Virus record (IMG/VR): IMGVR_UViG_3300033997_000092
Span: 124,001-188,000 of that record
DNA length: 64,000 nt
Reading direction: 5' to 3' (one strand)
Shown: positions 10,216-23,787 of the stretch, piece by piece
Layout of the letters: the number at the start of each line of letters is the position of its first letter
Position numbering within the stretch: position 1 is the first letter of the stretch
Made by a program: the position numbers and the translations under genes
Notes under the pieces: generated by a model
Database searches by the model: none
The model's input: the letters and a program-made list of their open reading frames with translations, nothing else
Told to the model about the DNA's origin: nothing

Positions 10216-10503
10216 ATGCTTGCGTCTTCTATGAGAAATATAAAAACTAAACCTTCACGCGCCTTATTGATTGCTCCTATGTTCAGTGACGTTGATATGG
10301 AAGCCTGTGAAGTTATCCACGACTCTACTGTAAAGTGTTATATATTACCAATCAAAGTAGAGGATCTGGCTCGCCGTGTAGTGAAATCAAACCATTTCTT
10401 AGGTCGCACAAGTTCTGATAAGTTGTATGTTATGCAACTGAAAACAGGACAGACTTACAATGTTATTGATTTGGGTAACGACAGCCTGATGATACTGATA
10501 TGA
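10216..10503 (+). CDS. Hypothetical protein
   Basis: 95-aa ORF with AGGTGA RBS. Confidence 0.6.
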   Translation: MLASSMRNIKTKPSRALLIAPMFSDVDMEACEVIHDSTVKCYILPIKVEDLARRVVKSNHFLGRTSSDKLYVMQLKTGQTYNVIDLGNDSLMILI

Positions 10504-11609
10504 TGTTCAAACCTATTAAGAAGGCGGCCACGACCGCTTTCGACTTTAATGCTTCAATGCAGGATTACAATCCAAATCGTCATGCGCCTTTGAGTAAGCT
10601 GGTTAATGAAGCCATGACTTCTGAGGTAGTTCTTCCTCGTGGCCGTGGTCCTGAGTTTAGACCCAGCTCGTTTCCAAGTTGTCCTATTTTAAACTGGATG
10701 AAGCTGATTCGATTTAAACATCTTGGCAATGTCGAAGCACTGCATTATTTCGGAATGGAGTATTATACTTCTGTTGGTACAACTGTCCACGAGAAGATTC
10801 AATACTTCATGGGCTTCACAGGTAAAATGTGGGGACACTGGAAGTGCATTAATCCAACGTGCCGCGAAGCACACAAAGCGGCTGACAAGCTCGACCCGTT
10901 AGGCAATGTCATTGCTGAAGGTAAGCCAACACGCCGATGTACAACAAACAACAAGTGTCCTGAATGTGCTGAGCCTATGTTCTACATAGAGTTCACTTTG
11001 AAGTTCCGCGGTGTCAAAGGTCACATCGATGGAATTGTAAAACTGGACAACGGTAAATGGATTGTTCTTGATTACAAGACAACTTCCATGAAGAAAGTAC
11101 GCAAAGGTTTATTTCCTGAAAAGAAACACTTGCACCAACTACCATTCTACACTTACGTCCTTGAAAAGAAATACGGCAAGAAGTATGGCATGAAGATTGA
11201 CCACTTCTCGCTTATCTATATACCCAGAGATAACCCACGAGCTTTCTTTGAGTACAAGGAAAAGTGGACAGACAACTGGCGTGTGCGCTGTGCTAAGCGC
11301 TTTGATGCCGAATGTGCTAAATGGGAAGCAATACGTGAAGACGTTGCTGGTGATACATTCCACAATGTTGTTGCCCACAAACCTTGCGCTTGTCCTGCCG
11401 ACTACAGAAATAAAATGTACGGCTTTGGTTCCTGTGTTATGGAATCAGTCTGCTTCTCTAGCGGCAAACTCAAAGGAACACTAGCTACGTGGTTAGACAT
11501 TCACAAACGCAAACCTCCAAGACTAAAAGCTTTCGAGGACGTTGTTGAAATGGTCACCCACGGTGAGTACAAAGCCAAAGCAACAAAATCTAAGGCACTC
11601 TCTATATGA
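10500..11609 (+). CDS. Cas4-like PD-(D/E)XK exonuclease
   Basis: RPSSFPSCP, GTTVHEKIQ, GHIDG, DYKT, QL..Y, C-terminal Cys cluster, inserted CxxxxC..CPEC. Confidence 0.8.
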   Translation: MMFKPIKKAATTAFDFNASMQDYNPNRHAPLSKLVNEAMTSEVVLPRGRGPEFRPSSFPSCPILNWMKLIRFKHLGNVEALHYFGMEYYTSVGTTVHEKIQYFMGFTGKMWGHWKCINPTCREAHKAADKLDPLGNVIAEGKPTRRCTTNNKCPECAEPMFYIEFTLKFRGVKGHIDGIVKLDNGKWIVLDYKTTSMKKVRKGLFPEKKHLHQLPFYTYVLEKKYGKKYGMKIDHFSLIYIPRDNPRAFFEYKEKWTDNWRVRCAKRFDAECAKWEAIREDVAGDTFHNVVAHKPCACPADYRNKMYGFGSCVMESVCFSSGKLKGTLATWLDIHKRKPPRLKAFEDVVEMVTHGEYKAKATKSKALSI

Positions 11610-11989
11610 AGAACACATTGGAGAAGTTACTTAGAATACGATCTAAGTTACCTCAGTCTGTTCAAAGTATACTTGATGTCAACTTGGATCAATCAATACC
11701 CAATATCCATATCTATCTTCACAACATATATTGGGCGCACATACACTTACAGGAAGCAATCACCGAACGTGACCGTATAGTGCCTGCAAAGAAAAGACAC
11801 TTGCAGGTAGTTAAAGCTTCAGGTAAAATAACGAACCACTATAGTTCAGTCAAGCTTGAGTCTTTAGACAGAGCATTGATAAGGCTGGACCGTGCGATTG
11901 TAACCAAACAGGATATAATCGAAATGTACGCTAAAAAAGTTGAGGAACTTTTAGATGCTCATAGAACTAAATTTAGCAAAACCGCTTGA
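11606..11989 (+). CDS. Hypothetical protein
   Basis: 127-aa coupled ORF. Confidence 0.6.
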   Translation: MKNTLEKLLRIRSKLPQSVQSILDVNLDQSIPNIHIYLHNIYWAHIHLQEAITERDRIVPAKKRHLQVVKASGKITNHYSSVKLESLDRALIRLDRAIVTKQDIIEMYAKKVEELLDAHRTKFSKTA

Positions 11990-12377
11990 GTCAACTAGTG
12001 GCAACAGTGACTTGAAGTTGCAGACACGTTTAGGCGATACTGGATCTTCAAACATTCGTCCAGAGGGACATGAAGAATTGGTAAAAGCTGAACAAGCCCG
12101 AACTAAAAAGCGTTTGCGTAAGATGACGTTGGACTTGGCTGTTGACGATGCTCAGCTAGATGAAGAAACCAAAAAACAAGAGAAAGAGCTTGATAAACTA
12201 CGGCAGGTTAATTTCTCTTTTGGTACTAAGTCTAAAAAGCCAAGTAAAGGTGTTAAACCAAAAGCTCCTGAAAAAGACGAAGAGGAAGAACCTGAAGAGG
12301 AGCCTGATGAAGGTGAATCTGATGCTGGCGATGAAGAAGACCAGGCCGACGACGAAGAAGCTGAAGGCGACGAGTAA
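11955..12377 (+). CDS. Hypothetical protein with acidic tail
   Basis: 140-aa ORF, GAGGA RBS. Confidence 0.65.
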   Translation: MLIELNLAKPLESTSGNSDLKLQTRLGDTGSSNIRPEGHEELVKAEQARTKKRLRKMTLDLAVDDAQLDEETKKQEKELDKLRQVNFSFGTKSKKPSKGVKPKAPEKDEEEEPEEEPDEGESDAGDEEDQADDEEAEGDE

Positions 12378-12388
12378 CATCTATAAAA

Positions 12389-12396
12389 CTGTAAAT
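12389..12396 (+). promoter_or_regulatory. Phage-specific CTGTAAAT promoter motif (representative; also 1781-, 5245-, 10187-, 19218+, 23682+, 35571+, 40532+, 40574+, 41202+, 52326+)
   Basis: Recurs in the correct orientation ~20-100 nt upstream of replication genes, the tRNA and the acidic-protein genes. Confidence 0.7.
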
Positions 12397-12439
12397 ACCT
12401 GTCTATACGACGGGTATTTTTATTTTTGGCGGAAAAAAC

Positions 12440-13399
12440 ATGGCTAAAGACAAAGTGAAAGAAAAGAAGAAAGCTAAGGCTGTTGACAAGAATGATGTCA
12501 AGTCAGGCAAGAAGCCAGGCAGGAGAGAACAGGCTGCCAGCTCCAAGAAGCTGATTAAGTCAAAAGGTCCTGAGTTTAAAAAGAACAACAAGACCGCCTC
12601 ACGCACTACTGATTTTACGGTAGATGATTTCAAAGAAGCTCCGTATAACCCGCGATATATCAGCCCTGTAGAATTGCAGCGCTTAGGTAAATCGATGACA
12701 ACATACGGTGACTTGAGCGGTATTGTTTTCAACAGGCACTCGGGTGTGACTATTTCTGGTCACCAGCGCTTGAAGCAAGTACGCTTGTATGAACACGGCA
12801 CTGTACTGAAAGATGTAAAAGATGACGGTTACGGTACTGTTGCTGAAGGTTACGTATGGTACAAAGGTCCTAACGGCAAAGTTCGCATTCCATTACGTGT
12901 AGTTGATTGGTCAGATAAGAAAGCTGAATTCGCAGCCAACATCGCAGCAAACGCACACGGTGGTTCGTTCGATAACAAACTGCTGGCTAACTTGGTTGAA
13001 GCAATTGAACCAGGTGACGGCGAGTTCGATATTGATTTACTTGGTATCGATCCTATTACAATCAAAACACTTCCTTATGAAGACAAGATCGGCGATGCTA
13101 ATAAAGAAACGTCTCCGTCAGGTTCCGGTCCATCGTTTGCAGAGTTCAACTCAGAAAGCTTCGACGGCGAGTTGGTACATGAATGTCCTCGTTGTAGTAT
13201 GCGCTTCAACGACAACGGTGAAGAAGTTGTCCGTAAAGGTTACTCTGAGCCTGAAGACGATGACGAAGAAGATGAAAAGCCTTCAAAGAAAAAGTCAAAG
13301 TCAAAGAAGGACAAAGACAAGCCTTTGAAGAAAGGCGCAAAAGAGCTTGCTGAGTTTTCTACTCCGGCTAAGAAAAAGCCCAAGAAGAAATCAAAATAA
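12440..13399 (+). CDS. ParB/Srx-like domain protein with Zn ribbon and Lys-rich termini
   Basis: APYNPRYIS, YGDLSGIVFN, ISGHQRL, ANIAAN, HECPRC. Confidence 0.8.
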   Translation: MAKDKVKEKKKAKAVDKNDVKSGKKPGRREQAASSKKLIKSKGPEFKKNNKTASRTTDFTVDDFKEAPYNPRYISPVELQRLGKSMTTYGDLSGIVFNRHSGVTISGHQRLKQVRLYEHGTVLKDVKDDGYGTVAEGYVWYKGPNGKVRIPLRVVDWSDKKAEFAANIAANAHGGSFDNKLLANLVEAIEPGDGEFDIDLLGIDPITIKTLPYEDKIGDANKETSPSGSGPSFAEFNSESFDGELVHECPRCSMRFNDNGEEVVRKGYSEPEDDDEEDEKPSKKKSKSKKDKDKPLKKGAKELAEFSTPAKKKPKKKSK

Positions 13400-13411
13400 A
13401 AGGAACGATTC

Positions 13412-14479
13412 ATGGCCAAAACAAAAAAGGCTGAAAAAGAATCGGCAGCAATGCGTATCAGTAGGCTGGTACCATTCGCTGTCCCTTCTATTAAGAAAAT
13501 CAACAAACATCCTAAACGCTATAAGTCCATAAGCTTGTTCGCTGGCTGTGGTGGCAGTAGTACGGGAATGAAGATGGCTGGATTTGATGTAATCTATGCC
13601 AATGAGTTTGTTGATATTGCCGCCGATACTTATGCTGCCAATGCTACATCACATACAAAAGTTGATCGCACAGACATTCGTAAAATCAAGTTCACTTCCC
13701 TTATGCGTGAACTTGGACTTAAAGAAGGCGAACTTGATCATATGGACGGTTCTCCTCCTTGCTCTAGTTTTAGTACAGCAGGTAAGCGTGAAGAAGATTG
13801 GGGTAAAGAGAAAGCCTACTCCGAAGATAAAGTCCAACGTACGGATGACCTGTTCCATGAATTCTGCCGCGCGCTACGTGCGTTTAAGCCAAAGACTTTT
13901 GATGCAGAGAATGTTTCTGGTCTTGTGAAGGGCATGGCTAAAGGTTACTTCCGTGAGATTGCTAAGCACCTTGAAGATTGTGGTTATGTTGTTGCTGCAC
14001 AGCTTCTTGATGCTAGTTGGCTCGGTGTTCCGCAGGCCCGTCAACGTATTGTGTTTGTTGGTGTCCGCAAAGACCTTGCAAAGAAGTACGGCTTCAAGCC
14101 TGTGTTTCCTAAACCTCTGTATCGTCAGGTTACTGTTCGTGAGTGTTTGCCTGACATAGCACGTATCAAAACGAAAGTACAGAGCGTTATCAAGTACGTT
14201 GATAGTAACAGGCCTAACAGTACGATTACAGCCAGTGATAGTTTAACTAGCCCGACAGCTAAATTCAGTGACGGTGGCTACATTGAAACATTTGACGGCG
14301 AACAACGCAAGTACAACATAGATGAACTGCGCGTCATCTGTGGGTTCCCTAGCGATTTCAAATTGTTAGGAACCTATGAACAACAATTTGAACGTCTTGG
14401 TCGTAGTCATGTGCCTGTGCAGATGTATTGGGTATGTAAAACTATTGCCGATGAAATTCTCGATAAGATTAAGGATTAG
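13412..14479 (+). CDS. C5-cytosine DNA methyltransferase family protein; predicted carboxymethyltransferase
   Basis: SLFAGCGG, GSPPCSSFS, ENV, PQARQRI, GFP; motif X reads GRS instead of GNS. Confidence 0.9.
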   Translation: MAKTKKAEKESAAMRISRLVPFAVPSIKKINKHPKRYKSISLFAGCGGSSTGMKMAGFDVIYANEFVDIAADTYAANATSHTKVDRTDIRKIKFTSLMRELGLKEGELDHMDGSPPCSSFSTAGKREEDWGKEKAYSEDKVQRTDDLFHEFCRALRAFKPKTFDAENVSGLVKGMAKGYFREIAKHLEDCGYVVAAQLLDASWLGVPQARQRIVFVGVRKDLAKKYGFKPVFPKPLYRQVTVRECLPDIARIKTKVQSVIKYVDSNRPNSTITASDSLTSPTAKFSDGGYIETFDGEQRKYNIDELRVICGFPSDFKLLGTYEQQFERLGRSHVPVQMYWVCKTIADEILDKIKD

Positions 14480-14481
14480 TT

Positions 14482-15258
14482 ATGTCTGAGAGTGGAGATA
14501 ACCACGTAGCCGATGATGGTGCTAAATGGTCCTTTGACGAAAAGGTAACTGCTTCGTTTGACGCTATGCTAGCCGACAGCATTCCAAGCTACGAAACTAT
14601 GCGTAACCTGTGTTTCGAGCTTGGTAAAAACTTTGTCCACAAAGGCAGCCTTATTGTTGACTTGGGCGCCAGTCGCGGTCAGAGTATACAGCGCTTTGTA
14701 GATCATTTCGATTCTATTTACGCGCCGACTGCCTTTGATGTTACTGGTCTTTCATCTGATGGTGTACAGCACGTACTCTTTGAGATTAGTCCTCCTATGA
14801 TGGACGTACTCAAAGATAAATTTTCATTGGCACCAAATATAATGTTGTGTCCAAACGACATTACTGTCCGTGGAAACATCAGTGCTGTGTGCAAGCCAAA
14901 AGCAGCCAGTTTGATTATGAGTATTCTGACAATTCAGTTTACTCCGATTGAGTACCGATTGCAGATCATCGATGAAATCTATCAGAGCTTAGAGCCTGGC
15001 GGTGCTTTTATTTTTGTTGAGAAAGTAATAGGCAATTCAGCACACATTGACCGACTCATGGTAAAAGAATACCTGGCACTAAAAGCCGATCACGGTTACA
15101 CTCAAGAGCAAATCAACAAGAAACGCAAAGCTCTTGAAGGTGTTCTCGTTCCTGTAACCGCCAAGTTTAACGAAGAAATGTTGCGTGATAGTGGATTCCG
15201 TTCTGTTGACTGTTTCTATCGTCACTTAAACTTTGCTGGCTGGATAGCTATCAAATGA
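14482..15258 (+). CDS. cmoA: Carboxy-S-adenosyl-L-methionine synthase (CmoA-like)
   Basis: WSFDEKVTASFDAMLADSIPSY, DLGASRG, LTIQF, L.PGG.FIFVEK, KRKALEGVLVP, NFAGWIAIK. Confidence 0.85.
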   Translation: MSESGDNHVADDGAKWSFDEKVTASFDAMLADSIPSYETMRNLCFELGKNFVHKGSLIVDLGASRGQSIQRFVDHFDSIYAPTAFDVTGLSSDGVQHVLFEISPPMMDVLKDKFSLAPNIMLCPNDITVRGNISAVCKPKAASLIMSILTIQFTPIEYRLQIIDEIYQSLEPGGAFIFVEKVIGNSAHIDRLMVKEYLALKADHGYTQEQINKKRKALEGVLVPVTAKFNEEMLRDSGFRSVDCFYRHLNFAGWIAIK

Positions 15259-16094
15259 AGAAAAAGAAACTTCCAAAAGTAAGGAAACTATTGGGAGAAG
15301 CATTGCAGCCACATCGTAAAAAGCGTTGTGGCGTTTTGCTTTCTGCTGGTGTGGATTCTCACAGTGTTTTACATGCCTGTTTGGATGTAGGCATACGACC
15401 ACTCGTAATAAGCTTTACTCGTCGTGATCACGAAAGCCGTGACTTCAAATCGGCACGTGAAGCTGCAACTCGTTTAGGATTGGATTTCTTTCCTGTCTAT
15501 CTTAAATCAGATCCAGAAGTTCTTGTACGTTATTTGCGCCATGCTGCAAAGCACGGTGTTCGTGGTAAAGCCGCTTTCGAGTGTCTATATCCGATGATGG
15601 CAACTGCCCGTAAGTTAAAACGTAAAGGCATAAAGATCGATTGTTTATTTTCCGGTTACGGTGCCGACGCCTTCTTTGCTTTGAGTAAGAAAGGATGTAT
15701 GCACTACCGTGACAAGATGGCTGAATACGCACTGGAAGCACATGCCCGATATGTCCGTAAAGGATCCCAGCTTGATATTCTCAAACGGTATTTCAAAGAT
15801 GTTGCCTGTGTCAAGTACAGTAGTCCGTGGTGTGCCGAATCTATCCGTGACAGCTTTACAAGACACACGTACTCACATGACGACTTAAACAAGCCAAAAC
15901 AAAAATGGCCTGTACGCAGAGACTTTGACAAAGAGTTCTCTGAGTCAAAAATTTTCAACCACACAAACTACCAGTTGGGTGATAGTGGTATTAGTGCAAT
16001 GTTCCTGCAGTTGCTCGATCACCGCATAAATAGCAAAAACTATAAATCAACTACTGGTATATACAACGACATTGTTCGGAGTCTCGATAAATGA
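15255..16094 (+). CDS. Asparagine synthetase-like ATP-dependent amide ligase (synthetase domain only)
   Basis: PP-loop LLSAGVDS, FSGYGADAFF, KW.VR; no N-terminal Ntn glutaminase domain. Confidence 0.75.
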   Translation: MKKKKLPKVRKLLGEALQPHRKKRCGVLLSAGVDSHSVLHACLDVGIRPLVISFTRRDHESRDFKSAREAATRLGLDFFPVYLKSDPEVLVRYLRHAAKHGVRGKAAFECLYPMMATARKLKRKGIKIDCLFSGYGADAFFALSKKGCMHYRDKMAEYALEAHARYVRKGSQLDILKRYFKDVACVKYSSPWCAESIRDSFTRHTYSHDDLNKPKQKWPVRRDFDKEFSESKIFNHTNYQLGDSGISAMFLQLLDHRINSKNYKSTTGIYNDIVRSLDK

Positions 16095-16570
16095 ATCACC
16101 TGCATCACCTGTATAATCAAGTACGCAAAGCAATACTTGCCGAAGCTACAATGGATAAAGAAGATCGACTTCTCCATAGTTGGCAATTTTTAGTTCAACT
16201 GAAAGGCGTCAACTACGTTGTTGGTAAGACAGGCTACAATACTATGTTTTACCGTATAGGTGATAAGGGCGATACAGTTACTGGCTACCCAGATGATATA
16301 CTCAAAGTGATATTGTCTTGGACCAAGGAAAAATATACAGGCTACATTATTTATGATGGCACTGAAATACGCCGTAAGTCAAAAAGCATCGAAAGCTTAC
16401 TCGAACGTACTGCTAAAAAGGACTACGTCATATTTGGTGTTCGGCCAGATAATACATGGTCCGCTTTGTATGAGGCCAACAACAGCCTAAAAGGTTACCG
16501 TTGGGTAAAAGTTAAAGCACCTGCATCTGACGTTAAAGTTAAAAAGACAAAGTCCAAAACAAAGCACTAA
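16091..16570 (+). CDS. Hypothetical protein
   Basis: 159-aa ORF coupled by ATGA overlap to the AsnB-like gene. Confidence 0.65.
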   Translation: MNHLHHLYNQVRKAILAEATMDKEDRLLHSWQFLVQLKGVNYVVGKTGYNTMFYRIGDKGDTVTGYPDDILKVILSWTKEKYTGYIIYDGTEIRRKSKSIESLLERTAKKDYVIFGVRPDNTWSALYEANNSLKGYRWVKVKAPASDVKVKKTKSKTKH

Positions 16571-16604: not shown

Positions 16605-17270
16605 ATGTCTAAGCAATATCGTGGTATACGTTCCAGTGTTCGTAAAACCAAATCAGAAGCCCGTCGTATGTTCGAGGCTAGACAGGAGCAATTAAAGAGC
16701 TTGTCAGCTCGTAACATAAAAGCCAAGCCTTTACGCAATAGCGTTAAAGATGGTTCGCATCCACCAATGCCTGATCGGGCTGTACGCATTGTTCCACTCA
16801 AAAAGATAGGTACTCTTGTTCAGCAGTTGCCTGATACTCCGATTACTCGTAAGGGTATGACGTTACGGCAATTGATGACAAAGACACCAGCGTTAATGCG
16901 TAACAACTCTGACGATGTTCAAATTGAAACATTGTCGAAGAAGAAAACAAAGTCAGGTTTGCCTGTAGTAGTTGCTAAGGGTTATACTGTTGACCCGTTT
17001 CGTCCAAAAGCAACTCGCCGTGTGCATGAGCTTTATATTGTAGGTCTTGATTCTCAATCGACTCCGATCAGTAAGCAGCGCCGTGTGCTTGTAAGTTGCA
17101 GTTGTGAAAACTACTGCTTTGTTTTTGAGTACGCGAATGCCTATCACGGCGCCAGTAAAATTCTTTACGGAAACGGCCAGAGTCCAGACTTTACTAATCC
17201 AGGTCTGTTACCTGGACTGTGTAAGCACTTGTACTCATTGGCTGAAATTGTACGTGAGAGAGGTATGTAA
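16605..17270 (+). CDS. SWIM-type Zn-finger protein
   Basis: VSCSCENY...LCKHL; GGAGG RBS. Confidence 0.65.
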   Translation: MSKQYRGIRSSVRKTKSEARRMFEARQEQLKSLSARNIKAKPLRNSVKDGSHPPMPDRAVRIVPLKKIGTLVQQLPDTPITRKGMTLRQLMTKTPALMRNNSDDVQIETLSKKKTKSGLPVVVAKGYTVDPFRPKATRRVHELYIVGLDSQSTPISKQRRVLVSCSCENYCFVFEYANAYHGASKILYGNGQSPDFTNPGLLPGLCKHLYSLAEIVRERGM

Positions 17271-17536
17271 TGGCTTGTGAAGGATGTCGCCGTCGCCGCG
17301 AAGCTTTGAAGCGTATGGCAAGCAATGTTATAAATTCCGTGACCCGTGCTGTCAGTCCAAGTCCTGAACCTGCACAATCACGTGGTACTGCATGTGCAGG
17401 ATGTACAACAAAAGCAACATCAGCAGGCTGGGTTAATGTGTGTCGTATTTGTTTGGGACAATCAGATCCGACGCCTTCTCCGAACCACTCTAATGAGCCT
17501 AAATGTAACTTATCTGTTTGTGAGCGTAGAAAATGA
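17270..17536 (+). CDS. Small Cys-rich protein
   Basis: MACEGCRRRR, several CxxC; coupled on both sides. Confidence 0.55.
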   Translation: MACEGCRRRREALKRMASNVINSVTRAVSPSPEPAQSRGTACAGCTTKATSAGWVNVCRICLGQSDPTPSPNHSNEPKCNLSVCERRK

Positions 17537-18192
17537 CACAAGAAAATCAATTAAATGGAACTGAATCCGCAGAAGCGGCTGAGTTGCGCCACGCCCGTGA
17601 ATTAATATCAAAGGCCGAAGATGTGATACAAAGACTTCGTGCCAGTTCTGACGTAGCCACTGAGGAGCTTGGCTCTGTTACAAGTAAGCTGCTTGACCTG
17701 CGTGTTGAACATCGCCTTTTAAAGTCCAAGCTTGATGCCACTTTATTCGACAAAGAAGCATTCAAGCAAAAGTGCGACAAGTTAGAAACAACTGTTAAAA
17801 ACTTGGAAGCCGAACTTGTCAAGCGTAGCACTCAGCTATTACGTGCTTCCAAGCGTAACCAAGAATCACTTGAATTATTTTCCAAGTGCGCTGTACTTTT
17901 CGCTTCTTATGTTTCAAGCTCGAAGCTTCCTGTTTATGTACTCACTCGCTTGAAAGAAATAAACTTTCCTAAGCCAAATACGATCCGTCGTGTTGTTGGT
18001 TTGCCTGCAGAAGCGTGTGCTGTAGAAGCTGTTAAGGTCGTGTTTGATCCGTTTAAGTCTATCAACAAAACTCCACCGACATTCACAAATTCAGATATGC
18101 CGATGGACTACTTCTTAAACGCATTTTATCACACCGTGTCTCCTATCGTTATTGAAGATGCGGAAGTGGCTGCTGGCGAGGAAGCCTCGTAA
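17533..18192 (+). CDS. Coiled-coil hypothetical protein
   Basis: 219-aa ORF with heptads. Confidence 0.65.
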   Translation: MTQENQLNGTESAEAAELRHARELISKAEDVIQRLRASSDVATEELGSVTSKLLDLRVEHRLLKSKLDATLFDKEAFKQKCDKLETTVKNLEAELVKRSTQLLRASKRNQESLELFSKCAVLFASYVSSSKLPVYVLTRLKEINFPKPNTIRRVVGLPAEACAVEAVKVVFDPFKSINKTPPTFTNSDMPMDYFLNAFYHTVSPIVIEDAEVAAGEEAS

Positions 18193-19208
18193 TGCTCGAA
18201 GGTAACCTTACTGGTGGCCAAATACAGGAAGTCATGGATAGGCTACTGTATGATGCACTCGCTCCTGTTATCAGATACACTAACGTATTTGACACCCAGC
18301 TTGTGTATCTTTTGGCTACCGTAACAAAGAATAAAAAGCGCAAGGTATGCGCTGTAAGCAGGCCTGAGACAATTGACTTTTTGTGTAAGGCACTTGCTAC
18401 TTCTGACCCAGAAGAAAAAATGATGTACATAAAGAAGTTGAAGATCGAACGCTCGTTCATTCACGTTTTCCTTAAACGGTTTGTTCAGGCGTATAAAGGT
18501 CCAATCTTCTCATTGTACTACCAGTTTATGTCAGACACTAAAAACAGACAGATATATTCCAAGCGCATGAAGCCTTATTTGGCAAGTGTTGGTTGTTCTG
18601 GCCGTTCCGAAATATTCATAGCGATAACTTCCTGTGAATCTAGTCTGACCCGTTTCTACCATTACTTCGACCGGGTCATTTCTCAGTATTACAAGCTGTG
18701 CTACTTAAAAGCAAAAGGCTTGGTTGATACTAATCCGAATAACAACTATGATTTCCATGACCTCGTGCAGAATTTAAGGCAGCGTACCATAACTGCCTTG
18801 AATAAGTACGATGCCTCTAATGGAGCCTTGACATCTTACATCAAGTGGTGGTTATTCAACAGCTTGACTTGTGGTAGTGGCCAGCATGAATACGGTTTGG
18901 CGTACACTGTTCCACAAAACGTAAAAAGAAAGTTGATGCAGTCTGACGGTCTTGGTGTCAACTTCTCTGTTAGTATGGACTCATTATTATCTGAATCTGA
19001 TGATGGTGAGAATTCAAACTTACACAACCTTATAGCTGGTGAGACTCCAGAGCTGGACGATGAAATCGCGTCCATATCGGAACTCAACCGTATGTATATG
19101 TTTGCCAAGAACGCTGACCCTCACGGCATAGCTAGACTGAGTTTAGAGCTGCCTGAAGTATTCAGTCCTAAAGAGTTGGCTAACATGCGTAAGACAACTG
19201 TGTTATAA
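18192..19208 (+). CDS. Phage sigma70-family RNA polymerase sigma factor
   Basis: Region-2-like DLVQNLRQRTITALNKYDASNGALTSYIKWWLFNSL, then YTVP and SVSMD. Confidence 0.7.
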   Translation: MLEGNLTGGQIQEVMDRLLYDALAPVIRYTNVFDTQLVYLLATVTKNKKRKVCAVSRPETIDFLCKALATSDPEEKMMYIKKLKIERSFIHVFLKRFVQAYKGPIFSLYYQFMSDTKNRQIYSKRMKPYLASVGCSGRSEIFIAITSCESSLTRFYHYFDRVISQYYKLCYLKAKGLVDTNPNNNYDFHDLVQNLRQRTITALNKYDASNGALTSYIKWWLFNSLTCGSGQHEYGLAYTVPQNVKRKLMQSDGLGVNFSVSMDSLLSESDDGENSNLHNLIAGETPELDDEIASISELNRMYMFAKNADPHGIARLSLELPEVFSPKELANMRKTTVL

Positions 19209-19258
19209 AAGCCGTATCTGTAAATAAACAGATCGATACTAAAAGCAAGGAGAAAACT

Positions 19259-23710: not shown

Positions 23711-23787
23711 GGCCCCTTAGCTCAGTTGGTTAGAGCACTCCCCTCATAAGGGATTGGTCTCCAGTTCAAATCTGGAAGGGGCCACCA
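23711..23787 (+). tRNA. tRNA with CAU anticodon, most likely tRNA-Ile2 (lysidine, reads AUA)
   Basis: GGCCCCT/AGGGGCC acceptor stem as in enterobacterial ileX, D arm, CT-CAT-AA loop, TTCAAAT T loop, encoded ACCA; lacks initiator features. Confidence 0.9.

What the first reader, a model, noticed from the sequence alone, without database searches (positions are those of the whole stretch)
12440..16570. Operon predicted to install carboxymethyl-cytosine (and an amide derivative) in phage DNA: ParB-like + C5-MTase(N->R) + CmoA + AsnB-like
Seen: four tightly spaced genes behind one CTGTAAAT promoter. The C5-MTase keeps all catalytic motifs, but motif X is L-G-R-S (Arg codon 14402-14404) instead of G-N-S/A. 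The next gene is a full CmoA, followed by a PP-loop amide ligase. Established: CmoA makes carboxy-SAM from SAM and prephenate, normally for tRNA cmo5U together with CmoB, and no CmoB is visible here. An engineered Asn->Lys change in M.MpeI (N374K) turns a C5-MTase into a carboxymethyltransferase. Inference: the Arg binds the Cx-SAM carboxylate, the enzyme writes 5-carboxymethylcytosine, and the AsnB-like enzyme amidates it, giving an anti-restriction hypermodified base. I recall a comparable pathway being reported for a cyanophage, so the chemistry may not be wholly new. Its presence, target site and end product in this jumbo phage would still need to be established.
Basis: partly seen in the sequence, partly recalled or inferred. 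Interest (0 to 1): 0.92.

Follow-up and report, generated by a model that had tools for sequence, protein, structure and literature searches.

The report
Phage carboxymethylcytosine DNA-modification gene cassette
This jumbo phage carries a gene cassette that very probably writes 5-carboxymethylcytosine into its DNA and then links an amine to it, but the pathway (CmoA/CmoX/CmoY) was published for a cyanophage in December 2025, so this is a new member of a known system.

Summary

- **C5-MTase:** its best solved relative is SpCmoX (PDB 8YF3, E 3.6e-57, against 1e-19 for ordinary C5-MTases). Its Arg331 (codon 14402-14404) aligns with SpCmoX Arg350, which binds the carboxy-SAM carboxylate in place of the usual Asn.
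- **CmoA:** it keeps Arg199 of E. coli CmoA (here Arg215). The 261-kb genome has no CmoB.
- **Ligase:** a synthetase domain alone, with no glutaminase domain, like SpCmoY.

However, the chemistry, the Arg rule, the ligase step and the ParB association were all published by Yang et al. (Nat Commun 2025, PMC12783734), who counted 5,615 such MTases in viral data.

Three things remain open:
- the target motif, because the target-recognition region differs from SpCmoX;
- the amine, because the ligase is only 27-31% identical to the glycine ligase;
- the role of the 159-aa protein, whose family sits almost only inside such cassettes.

Verdict: new member of a known kind, moderate to low interest.

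The parts
12389..12396 (+). CTGTAAAT motif, a candidate phage promoter element upstream of the cassette
   Evidence: The window has 15 copies against 3.1 expected, and none of 100 shuffles reached 15. Most copies are intergenic, 30-70 nt before start codons and in the same orientation. Genome-wide there are 30 copies against about 12.6 expected from base composition, both strands. The phage encodes its own sigma factor at 18192-19208. Promoter function is not shown.
12393..12419 (+). Terminator-like hairpin followed by a T-run, probably ending the upstream gene 11955-12377; it overlaps the motif
   Evidence: 11-pair stem (4 G-C), 5-nt loop, then TTATTTTTGG.
12440..13399 (+). ParB-like (ParB N-terminal / sulfiredoxin-fold) protein, 319 aa, with Lys-rich tails; probable DNA-binding partner of the MTase
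   Evidence: PHROG 620, E 5.1e-29. ESM Atlas score 0.95, with 81 of 100 feature hits being ParB_N clusters. It is 50% identical to the PaBG 'ParB-like nuclease'. Homologues sit directly upstream of CmoX in PaBG, L017, L018 and L027, 0.6 kb upstream in L022, and directly upstream in pEa_SNUABM_5, where CmoX is 18 kb from CmoA. Pfam PF02195 itself gives no hit.
13412..14479 (+). CmoX-type DNA cytosine C5-carboxymethyltransferase, 355 aa; catalytic SPPC at 13751-13762; Arg331 codon at 14402-14404
   Evidence: PF00145, E 6.7e-49. Best PDB hit is 8YF3 (SpCmoX), E 3.6e-57, with R331 aligned to R350. It is 56% identical to the PaBG MTase. It is the only PF00145 gene in the genome. All MTases next to a CmoA in the fetched loci carry E-R-x-G-R, while the 10 MTases in loci without a detected CmoA carry G-M-S.
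14482..15258 (+). CmoA-type carboxy-SAM synthase, 258 aa; Arg215 codon at 15124-15126
   Evidence: TIGR00740, E 2.9e-35, below the curated cut-off. Best PDB hits are E. coli CmoA 4GEK (4e-23) and YecO 1IM8. Y37, D60, G62, S64 and R215 align to EcCmoA Y39, D62, G64, S66 and R199. It is 29% identical to the biochemically proven SpCmoA.
15255..16094 (+). CmoY-like ATP-dependent (AMP-forming) amide ligase, 279 aa: an AsnB-type synthetase domain only; PP-loop SAGVDS at 15342-15359
   Evidence: PF00733, E 8e-11. The AF2 model has pLDDT 95.9. Foldseek top hits are the synthetase domains of beta-lactam synthetase, AsnB (TMq 0.77), ASNS and carbapenam synthetase. All 55 homologues found are 250-301 aa and none carries a glutaminase domain. 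It is 27-31% identical to SpCmoY.
16091..16570 (+). ORF159, a conserved cassette-associated protein of unknown function whose start overlaps the end of the ligase gene by 4 nt
   Evidence: PHROG 23597, E 2.6e-31. The family has about 75 clusters at 50% identity. Twelve of 13 informative contexts lie beside or within about 2 kb of CmoA and/or the ligase, in varying gene order. The model is confident (pLDDT 92) but has no significant fold match.

Best explanation
The cassette is a member of the published CmoA-CmoX-CmoY phage DNA hypermodification system.

1. CmoA converts SAM plus host prephenate into carboxy-SAM.
2. The C5-MTase homologue (CmoX) flips out a target cytosine in phage dsDNA and attacks C6 with Cys117. 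It transfers the carboxymethyl group of Cx-SAM to C5, with Arg331 holding the cofactor's carboxylate. The product is 5-carboxymethylcytosine.
3. The stand-alone AsnB-type synthetase (CmoY-like) adenylates that carboxylate and couples it to an amine. Glycine or another small amine or amino acid is most plausible. The product is an amide-hypermodified cytosine that blocks host restriction.
4. The ParB-like protein is a DNA-binding helper tied to CmoX.
5. ORF159 is a lineage-specific accessory of the CmoA/ligase half, with unknown role.

Basis of each step:
- Shown here by sequence: family membership, the diagnostic residues, the gene linkage, and the absence of CmoB.
- Taken from the published homologues: the chemistry.
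- Inferred: the target motif, the amine, the anti-restriction role, and the roles of the ParB-like protein and ORF159.
For: - **CmoX:** the best solved relative is SpCmoX 8YF3 at 3.6e-57, against 1.5e-19 for M.HaeIII. R331 aligns to R350, and the codon was checked.
- **Published precedent:** SpCmoX accepts only Cx-SAM, R350 contacts the carboxymethyl group, SpCmoA makes Cx-SAM, SpCmoY ligates glycine, and virion DNA carries the glycine amide (PMC12783734).
- **CmoA:** R215 equals EcCmoA R199, the residue that salt-bridges the cofactor carboxylate.
- **Genome content:** no CmoB, one C5-MTase and one Asn_synthase in the complete genome.
- **Ligase:** the fold is an AsnB / beta-lactam-synthetase synthetase domain with an intact PP-loop and no glutaminase domain.
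- **Conservation:** the same gene set occurs in PaBG in the same order, and in 50 Erwinia/Dickeya and 1 Yersinia jumbo-phage records. It also occurs in metagenomic contigs L017, L018, L021, L022, L027 and L028. In the fetched loci the Arg in motif X co-occurs with a CmoA neighbour.
Against: - There are no biochemical or DNA-composition data for this uncultured phage. All sequencing runs that hold it are kept only as contigs.
- CmoA scores below NCBIfam's trusted cut-off.
- The ligase is only 27-31% identical to SpCmoY. The tblastn E of 4e-16 is far weaker than the 1e-56 edge threshold the paper used for ligase clusters, so the amine may differ.
- The target-recognition region does not align with SpCmoX, so the GC motif cannot be transferred.
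- The genome strongly avoids many 6-bp palindromes, including GpC-containing ones: ATGCAT 1 against 58 expected, TGCGCA 1 against 31, CAGCTG 7 against 77. This suggests the modification does not give blanket protection of GpC sites.
Confidence: 0.78

Rival explanations
1. The pathway is the same up to 5cxmC, but the end product is a different, undescribed amide, made with an amine other than glycine. ORF159 would take part, for example by delivering or selecting the amine or by acting on DNA. The target motif would be narrower than GC.
For: - The ligase belongs to a separate sequence group from SpCmoY: 27-31% identity and E 4e-16.
- D243 in the QLGDSGI motif is invariant in this ligase group and is missing in SpCmoY.
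- The paper itself notes ligase clusters with different pocket residues and unknown amines.
- ORF159 stays linked to CmoA and the ligase through several gene-order rearrangements.
- The target-recognition region differs from SpCmoX.
- GpC-containing palindromes are strongly avoided.
Against: - Most other residues conserved in this ligase group are shared with SpCmoY, including K105, E109, D138, the NKP.QK motif, R221 and H236.
- S-B43 performs the full chemistry without any ORF159 homologue.
- The fold and complex predictions gave no functional lead for ORF159.
Confidence: 0.35
2. The cassette stops at a plain carboxamide, 5-carbamoylmethylcytosine (dC +57 Da), with free ammonia as the nucleophile.
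For: AsnB-type synthetase domains can use ammonia (established knowledge of asparagine synthetase B). The fold matches AsnB at TMq 0.77.
Against: - No glutaminase domain is found in this protein or in any of its 55 homologues.
- In the paper, the ligase cluster predicted to use ammonia is the one that carries the glutamine-hydrolysing domain, whereas the domain-less SpCmoY uses glycine.
Confidence: 0.1
3. This is an ordinary methylation module. The MTase writes 5mC with SAM, while CmoA and the ligase serve tRNA or metabolite modification, as the database names 'tRNA methyltransferase' and 'asparagine synthase' suggest.
For: The default annotations of homologues in PHROGs and GenBank.
Against: - Arg replaces the motif X Asn. 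SpCmoX accepts only Cx-SAM, and its R350N mutant is dead with both cofactors.
- The genome has no CmoB.
- The only tRNA in the window is tRNA-Met(CAT), which is not a cmo5U tRNA.
- The genes are tightly coupled and their linkage is conserved.
Confidence: 0.04

Closest known systems
CmoA-CmoX-CmoY system of Synechococcus phage S-B43 (Yang et al., Nat Commun 2025, PMC12783734; SpCmoX structure PDB 8YF3)
   Same: - It has the same three enzyme families.
- The CmoX SPPC motif and the Cx-SAM-binding Arg are conserved (R331 = R350).
- CmoA keeps the Arg199 equivalent.
- The ligase is an Asn_synthase domain without a glutaminase domain.
- There is no CmoB.
- A ParB-domain neighbour is present, a feature the paper reports for 1,660 contigs.
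   Different: - Identity is only 34-39% for CmoX, 29% for CmoA and 27-31% for the ligase.
- The gene order differs: ParB-X-A-Y-ORF159 here, A-Y-X in S-B43.
- The target-recognition region differs, because SpCmoX has three insertions there.
- An extra ORF159 is present, and a separate ParB-like gene. No ParB-like gene is annotated within 5 kb of the S-B43 cassette.
- The host lineage is a PaBG/Erwinia-type jumbo phage, not a cyanomyovirus.
Pseudomonas phage PaBG genes 176-180 (Baikalvirus), with the Erwinia/Dickeya/Yersinia jumbo phages (Alexandravirus, Rivsvirus, Yoloswag, Y3, fHe-Yen9-02)
   Same: These are the closest cultured relatives of the cassette. PaBG has ParB-like, CmoX (56% identity), CmoA (41%), an ORF159 homologue (33%) and the ligase (35%) in one block. 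The PaBG genome paper did not recognise the pathway.
   Different: - In PaBG the ORF159 homologue sits between CmoA and the ligase.
- In the Erwinia-type phages the CmoX gene lies about 18 kb from CmoA and the ligase. In pEa_SNUABM_5, where it was examined, a ParB-like gene sits directly upstream and CmoX carries an insertion of about 350 aa after the PPC motif.
- Alexandra adds a DUF1611-like gene that this genome lacks.
Engineered M.MpeI N374K carboxymethyltransferase
   Same: A basic residue replaces the motif X Asn in the SAM pocket, which lets a C5-MTase use Cx-SAM (as described in PMC12783734).
   Different: M.MpeI N374K is an engineered Lys variant specific for CG. The enzyme here is natural, carries Arg, and its motif is unknown.
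Bacterial tRNA cmo5U pathway (CmoA + CmoB)
   Same: CmoA makes Cx-SAM from SAM and prephenate, and Arg199 binds the carboxylate (PMC3663124).
   Different: No CmoB is present. The acceptor enzyme is a DNA C5-MTase homologue, so the substrate is DNA cytosine rather than tRNA ho5U34.

Membership tests
CmoX (DNA cytosine C5-carboxymethyltransferase) | C5-MTase catalytic core with the SPPC catalytic-Cys motif | tested here: met
   PF00145, E 6.7e-49. S114-P-P-C117, ENV and QARQR are present.
CmoX (DNA cytosine C5-carboxymethyltransferase) | Arg at the position of SpCmoX R350 (HhaI N304), which binds the Cx-SAM carboxylate | tested here: met
   R331 aligns to R350 both in the phmmer alignment to 8YF3 and in the MAFFT alignment. 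The codon CGT is at 14402-14404.
CmoX (DNA cytosine C5-carboxymethyltransferase) | A CmoA gene in the neighbourhood | tested here: met
   CmoA starts 2 nt after the CmoX stop codon.
CmoX (DNA cytosine C5-carboxymethyltransferase) | Cx-SAM-dependent formation of 5cxmC on dsDNA | not testable with these tools
   This needs an enzyme assay or LC-MS. It has been shown only for SpCmoX.
CmoA (carboxy-SAM synthase) | Score above the curated equivalog threshold (TIGR00740 / NF011995) | tested here: not met
   122.1 bits against a cut-off of 193.3, and 83.9 against 285. The proven phage enzyme SpCmoA is itself only 29% identical to this protein and was not scored against the model here.
CmoA (carboxy-SAM synthase) | Arg199 (E. 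coli numbering), which salt-bridges the carboxymethyl carboxylate, plus the SAM-binding residues Y39, D62, G64 and S66 | tested here: met
   R215, Y37, D60, G62 and S64 align to them in the 4GEK alignment, with the chain offset of 14 verified through Y39. N132 is not conserved (Ile here).
CmoY (5cxmC amide ligase) | AsnB-type AMP-forming synthetase domain with a PP-loop and no glutaminase domain | tested here: met
   PF00733. SAGVDS at residues 30-35. The model fold matches 1CT9, 1MBZ and 6GQ3. All homologues are 250-301 aa.
CmoY (5cxmC amide ligase) | Glycine-carboxylate-binding pocket residues of the SpCmoY cluster | not testable with these tools
   The residues are given only in figure images (Supplementary Fig. 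8). Identity to SpCmoY is 27-31%, with E 4e-16.
ParB N-terminal domain (PF02195) protein associated with CmoX | Match to the ParB_N profile | tested here: inconclusive
   No Pfam hit at E 10, and none by a genome-wide search. Against that, PHROG 620 matches at 5e-29, ESM Atlas scores 0.95 with 81 of 100 hits in ParB_N clusters, and structural matches reach the ParB_N-fused DNA MTases at TM 0.5-0.57.
tRNA cmo5U pathway (CmoA/CmoB) | Presence of the carboxymethyltransferase CmoB | tested here: not met
   TIGR00452 finds nothing in the complete 261-kb genome. The control genomes do ring.

The most novel reading that the evidence does not exclude
This jumbo-phage lineage may make a cytosine hypermodification that is not the published glycine amide. 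A distinct CmoY subfamily, possibly helped by the cassette-restricted ORF159 family (confident model, no recognisable fold), would attach another amine to 5cxmC at a motif narrower than GC. That would extend the 'carboxyl handle' chemistry to a new base and add a fifth, uncharacterised component.
Probability: 0.3. Interest if true: 0.55.

Novelty: new member of a known kind. Interest (0 to 1): 0.3.

Why it matters
It places the recently discovered 5-carboxymethylcytosine pathway in the PaBG/Erwinia-type jumbo phages. These include cultured phages of Pseudomonas aeruginosa, Erwinia amylovora, Dickeya and Yersinia, whose genome papers and annotations call these genes tRNA methyltransferase and asparagine synthase.

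Such a base modification would affect restriction digests, sequencing and host-range or defence studies with these phages.

The open items are the target motif, the amine and the ORF159 protein. They are concrete and cheap to test, because E. coli supplies Cx-SAM itself.

As a discovery it adds little. The published survey already counted thousands of such cassettes in viral metagenomes, probably including this IMG/VR contig.

Tried and rejected
- **Nucleotide search against the phage collection** (megablast): no match. Relatives are visible only at protein level.
- **The search for related loci with single proteins:** ORF159 and CmoA found nothing. CmoY found one locus. CmoX found only ordinary MTases without CmoA.
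- **Word-based homologue search for ORF159:** only near-identical proteins. The exhaustive HMMER search was needed.
- **Function of ORF159:** Foldseek against PDB and AFDB clusters, VIA-align wide and the ESM Atlas gave nothing above noise. The best was Z 6.9 to YkuJ / PUR-like folds over the N-terminal half only.
- **Complex prediction of CmoA + ligase + ORF159:** 'no answer'. This is not evidence either way.
- **Chorismate mutase as a prephenate source:** none in the genome. ORF159 does not match any chorismate mutase fold.
- **Read-level evidence for modification:** not possible. All runs holding the phage are stored as assembled contigs.
- **Glycine-pocket residues of SpCmoY:** available only as images in the paper's supplement.
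- **Inferring the target motif from palindrome statistics:** suggestive only.

Full report
**Observation**

The region 12440-16570 holds five co-directional ORFs on the + strand, either almost touching or overlapping:
- 12440-13399 (319 aa)
- 13412-14479 (355 aa)
- 14482-15258 (258 aa)
- 15255-16094 (279 aa)
- 16091-16570 (159 aa)

The last two junctions are 4-nt ATGA-type overlaps.

Profile searches give the following:
- The second ORF matches PF00145 C5-MTase at 6.7e-49.
- The third matches CmoA TIGR00740 at 2.9e-35, though below the curated cut-off, and PHROG 4752 at 3.6e-64.
- The fourth matches PF00733 Asn_synthase at 8e-11, over the synthetase part only.
- The first has no Pfam hit even at E 10. 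It matches PHROG 620 'ParB-like' at 5e-29, and the ESM Atlas places it among ParB_N clusters: score 0.95, 81 of 100 hits.

The sequence at 14384-14425 translates to QFERLGRSHVPVQM, with the Arg codon CGT at 14402-14404.

**Promoter claim**

CTGTAAAT occurs 15 times in the window against 3.1 expected. Copies mostly lie 30-70 nt upstream of start codons and in the gene's orientation. The phage encodes its own sigma factor at 18192-19208. The motif is therefore a reasonable promoter candidate, but this is not shown.

At 12389 the motif overlaps a terminator-like hairpin with a T-run at 12393-12419. At other sites such hairpins precede the motif. The next copy is at 19218, so the transcription unit may run on through 16605-19208.

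**What it is**

Yang et al., Nat Commun 2025 (PMC12783734) showed the following for Synechococcus phage S-B43:
- A phage CmoA makes carboxy-SAM.
- A C5-MTase homologue, CmoX, transfers the carboxymethyl group to cytosine C5 at GC sites.
- An asparagine-synthetase-like ligase, CmoY, couples glycine to it.
- In the crystal structure 8YF3, Arg350 replaces HhaI Asn304 and contacts the carboxymethyl group. The wild-type enzyme accepts only Cx-SAM.
- A survey found 5,615 CmoX, 4,257 CmoA, 2,251 ligases and 1,660 ParBc proteins in viral data, including IMG/VR v4.

The window's MTase has 8YF3 as its best solved relative at 3.6e-57. M.HaeIII scores 1.5e-19 and M.HhaI 1.4e-14. In that alignment, and in a MAFFT alignment with SpCmoX and the PaBG enzyme, R331 falls on R350 within a conserved QQxERxGR block. 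SPPC is also conserved.

Among the loci fetched here:
- Every MTase with a CmoA neighbour has the Arg. This holds for S-B43, PaBG, L017, L018 and L022 and for L027. L021, a 2.3-kb contig with no CmoA in view, and pEa_SNUABM_5 also carry it.
- The ten MTases from loci without a detected CmoA have G-M-S at that position.

CmoA's best solved relatives are E. coli CmoA 4GEK (4e-23) and YecO 1IM8. Its R215 aligns with Arg199, the residue that salt-bridges the cofactor carboxylate and distinguishes CmoA from ordinary SAM enzymes (PMC3663124). Y39, D62, G64 and S66 are also conserved.

The complete genome is an IMG/VR record of 261,032 bp with direct terminal repeats, and the window is bases 124001-188000. 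It has no CmoB, one C5-MTase, one Asn_synthase and no chorismate mutase.

The ligase model is confident (pLDDT 95.9). It matches the synthetase domains of beta-lactam synthetase, AsnB (TMq 0.77), human ASNS and carbapenam synthetase. It has a PP-loop, SAGVDS. All 55 homologues found are 250-301 aa and none has a glutaminase domain.

**Relatives**

The closest cultured relative is Pseudomonas phage PaBG. It has ParB-like, CmoX (56% identity), CmoA, an ORF159 homologue and the ligase in one block. Its genome paper lists the genes separately and does not recognise a pathway.

The set is also present in 48 Erwinia, 2 Dickeya and 1 Yersinia jumbo-phage records. In those phages CmoX lies about 18 kb from CmoA and the ligase. 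In pEa_SNUABM_5, the one examined, a ParB-like gene sits directly upstream of it.

This argues for two sub-modules: ParB-like + CmoX, and CmoA + ORF159 + ligase.

A core SSB gene shows that the wider clade (Phage NCTB, Lu11, Dickeya JA11 and JA29, phiRSL1 and others) mostly does not appear among the hits for the cassette genes.

The phage itself is found in subsurface metagenomes, its likely source, and in wastewater metagenomes from 2024.

**What remains unknown**

1. **Target motif.** The region between motifs VIII and IX does not align with SpCmoX, which has three insertions there. GC specificity therefore cannot be assumed. The genome avoids many 6-bp palindromes to an extreme degree: AACGTT 1 against 91 expected, ACATGT 1 against 58, ATGCAT 1 against 58, TGCGCA 1 against 31, CAGCTG 7 against 77. 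All xGGCCx sites are at expectation. Strong avoidance of GpC-containing sites fits poorly with blanket GpC protection. This is an inference, not a test.

2. **Amine.** Identity to the glycine ligase SpCmoY is 27-31%, with E 4e-16. Most conserved residues are shared. However, D243 of the QLGDSGI motif, invariant in this group, is missing in SpCmoY. The paper gives the pocket residues only as images. A plain amide from glutamine is disfavoured because there is no glutaminase domain.

3. **ORF159.**
   - *Family and context.* The family has about 75 clusters at 50% identity. In 12 of 13 informative contexts it lies beside or within about 2 kb of CmoA and/or the ligase. The gene orders vary: A-159, Y-159, A-159-Y, Y-A-159 and A-x-159-x-Y.
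   - *Where it is absent.* It is absent near the S-B43 cassette, and that cassette works without it.
   - *Structure and binding.* Its model is confident (pLDDT 92). Fold searches give nothing above noise, and a complex prediction gave no answer.

**Verdict**

The system is a new member of a known kind. Interest lies only in the lineage, the undefined motif and amine, and the extra protein.

Noticed in passing
whole genome G000 (window = G000:124001-188000): Many 6-bp palindromes are avoided to an extreme degree (maximal-order Markov observed/expected): AACGTT 1 against 90.7, ACATGT 1 against 58.4, ATGCAT 1 against 58.3, TGCGCA 1 against 31, AGTACT 4 against 70.5, CAGCTG 7 against 77, TTCGAA 6 against 56.9. 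Among 4-mers, CTAG is at 0.41, CCGG 0.51 and GATC 0.57. All xGGCCx sites, GCCGGC and GAATTC are not avoided. Site avoidance therefore coexists with the modification cassette.
   Followed up: partly
window 16091-16570: ORF159 belongs to a small family (about 75 clusters at 50% identity) found almost only inside CmoA/CmoY cassettes, in varying gene order. It has a confident AF2 model with no recognisable fold, and it is not mentioned in the published description of the pathway.
   Followed up: yes
window 16605-17270: This 221-aa protein (PHROG 18980, unknown function) has a SWIM-like C-x-C...C-x-H pattern (VSCSCENYC ... GLCKHLYS). Homologues lie downstream of the cassette in L017, L018 and L022.
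   Followed up: partly
window 18192-19208, with CTGTAAAT sites (e.g. 19218, 23682, 35571, 40574, 41202, 52326): A phage-encoded sigma factor is present (PHROG 17569 at 1e-104; Sigma70_r2 weak). The over-represented intergenic CTGTAAAT motif may be its promoter element. One copy precedes the tRNA-Met at 23711-23787.
   Followed up: partly
L026:1666-3771 (Erwinia phage pEa_SNUABM_5): The CmoX homologue there is 701 aa. Residues 6-97 and 446-685 match the window's enzyme, and an insertion of about 350 aa starts right after the catalytic PPC motif. This could be an intein or an inserted domain. A ParB-like gene, annotated 'transcriptional repressor', sits directly upstream.
   Followed up: partly
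L004:3178-4233 (Erwinia phage Alexandra) and L027:3429-4457: Some relatives carry an extra DUF1611-family gene inside the cassette, beside the ligase. The two copies are 42% identical to each other. None is found in this genome. This hints at a more elaborate modification in those phages.
   Followed up: partly
L018:6313-6999 and L022:6254-6988: The CmoA-like proteins of these related cassettes do not keep the Arg199 equivalent. L018 has Glu and L022 has Lys in the alignment.
   Followed up: no
L006-L015 (IMG/VR contigs): C5-MTases with no detected CmoA neighbour, about 45% identical to the N-terminal half of the window's enzyme, carry G-M-S-V-P-P at motif X instead of the canonical G-N-S/A.
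   Followed up: no
window 10500-11609: A PD-(D/E)XK / Cas4-like exonuclease gene (PF12705 at 5.7e-9; PHROG 1706 at 5.6e-32) lies upstream of the cassette in the same orientation.
   Followed up: no
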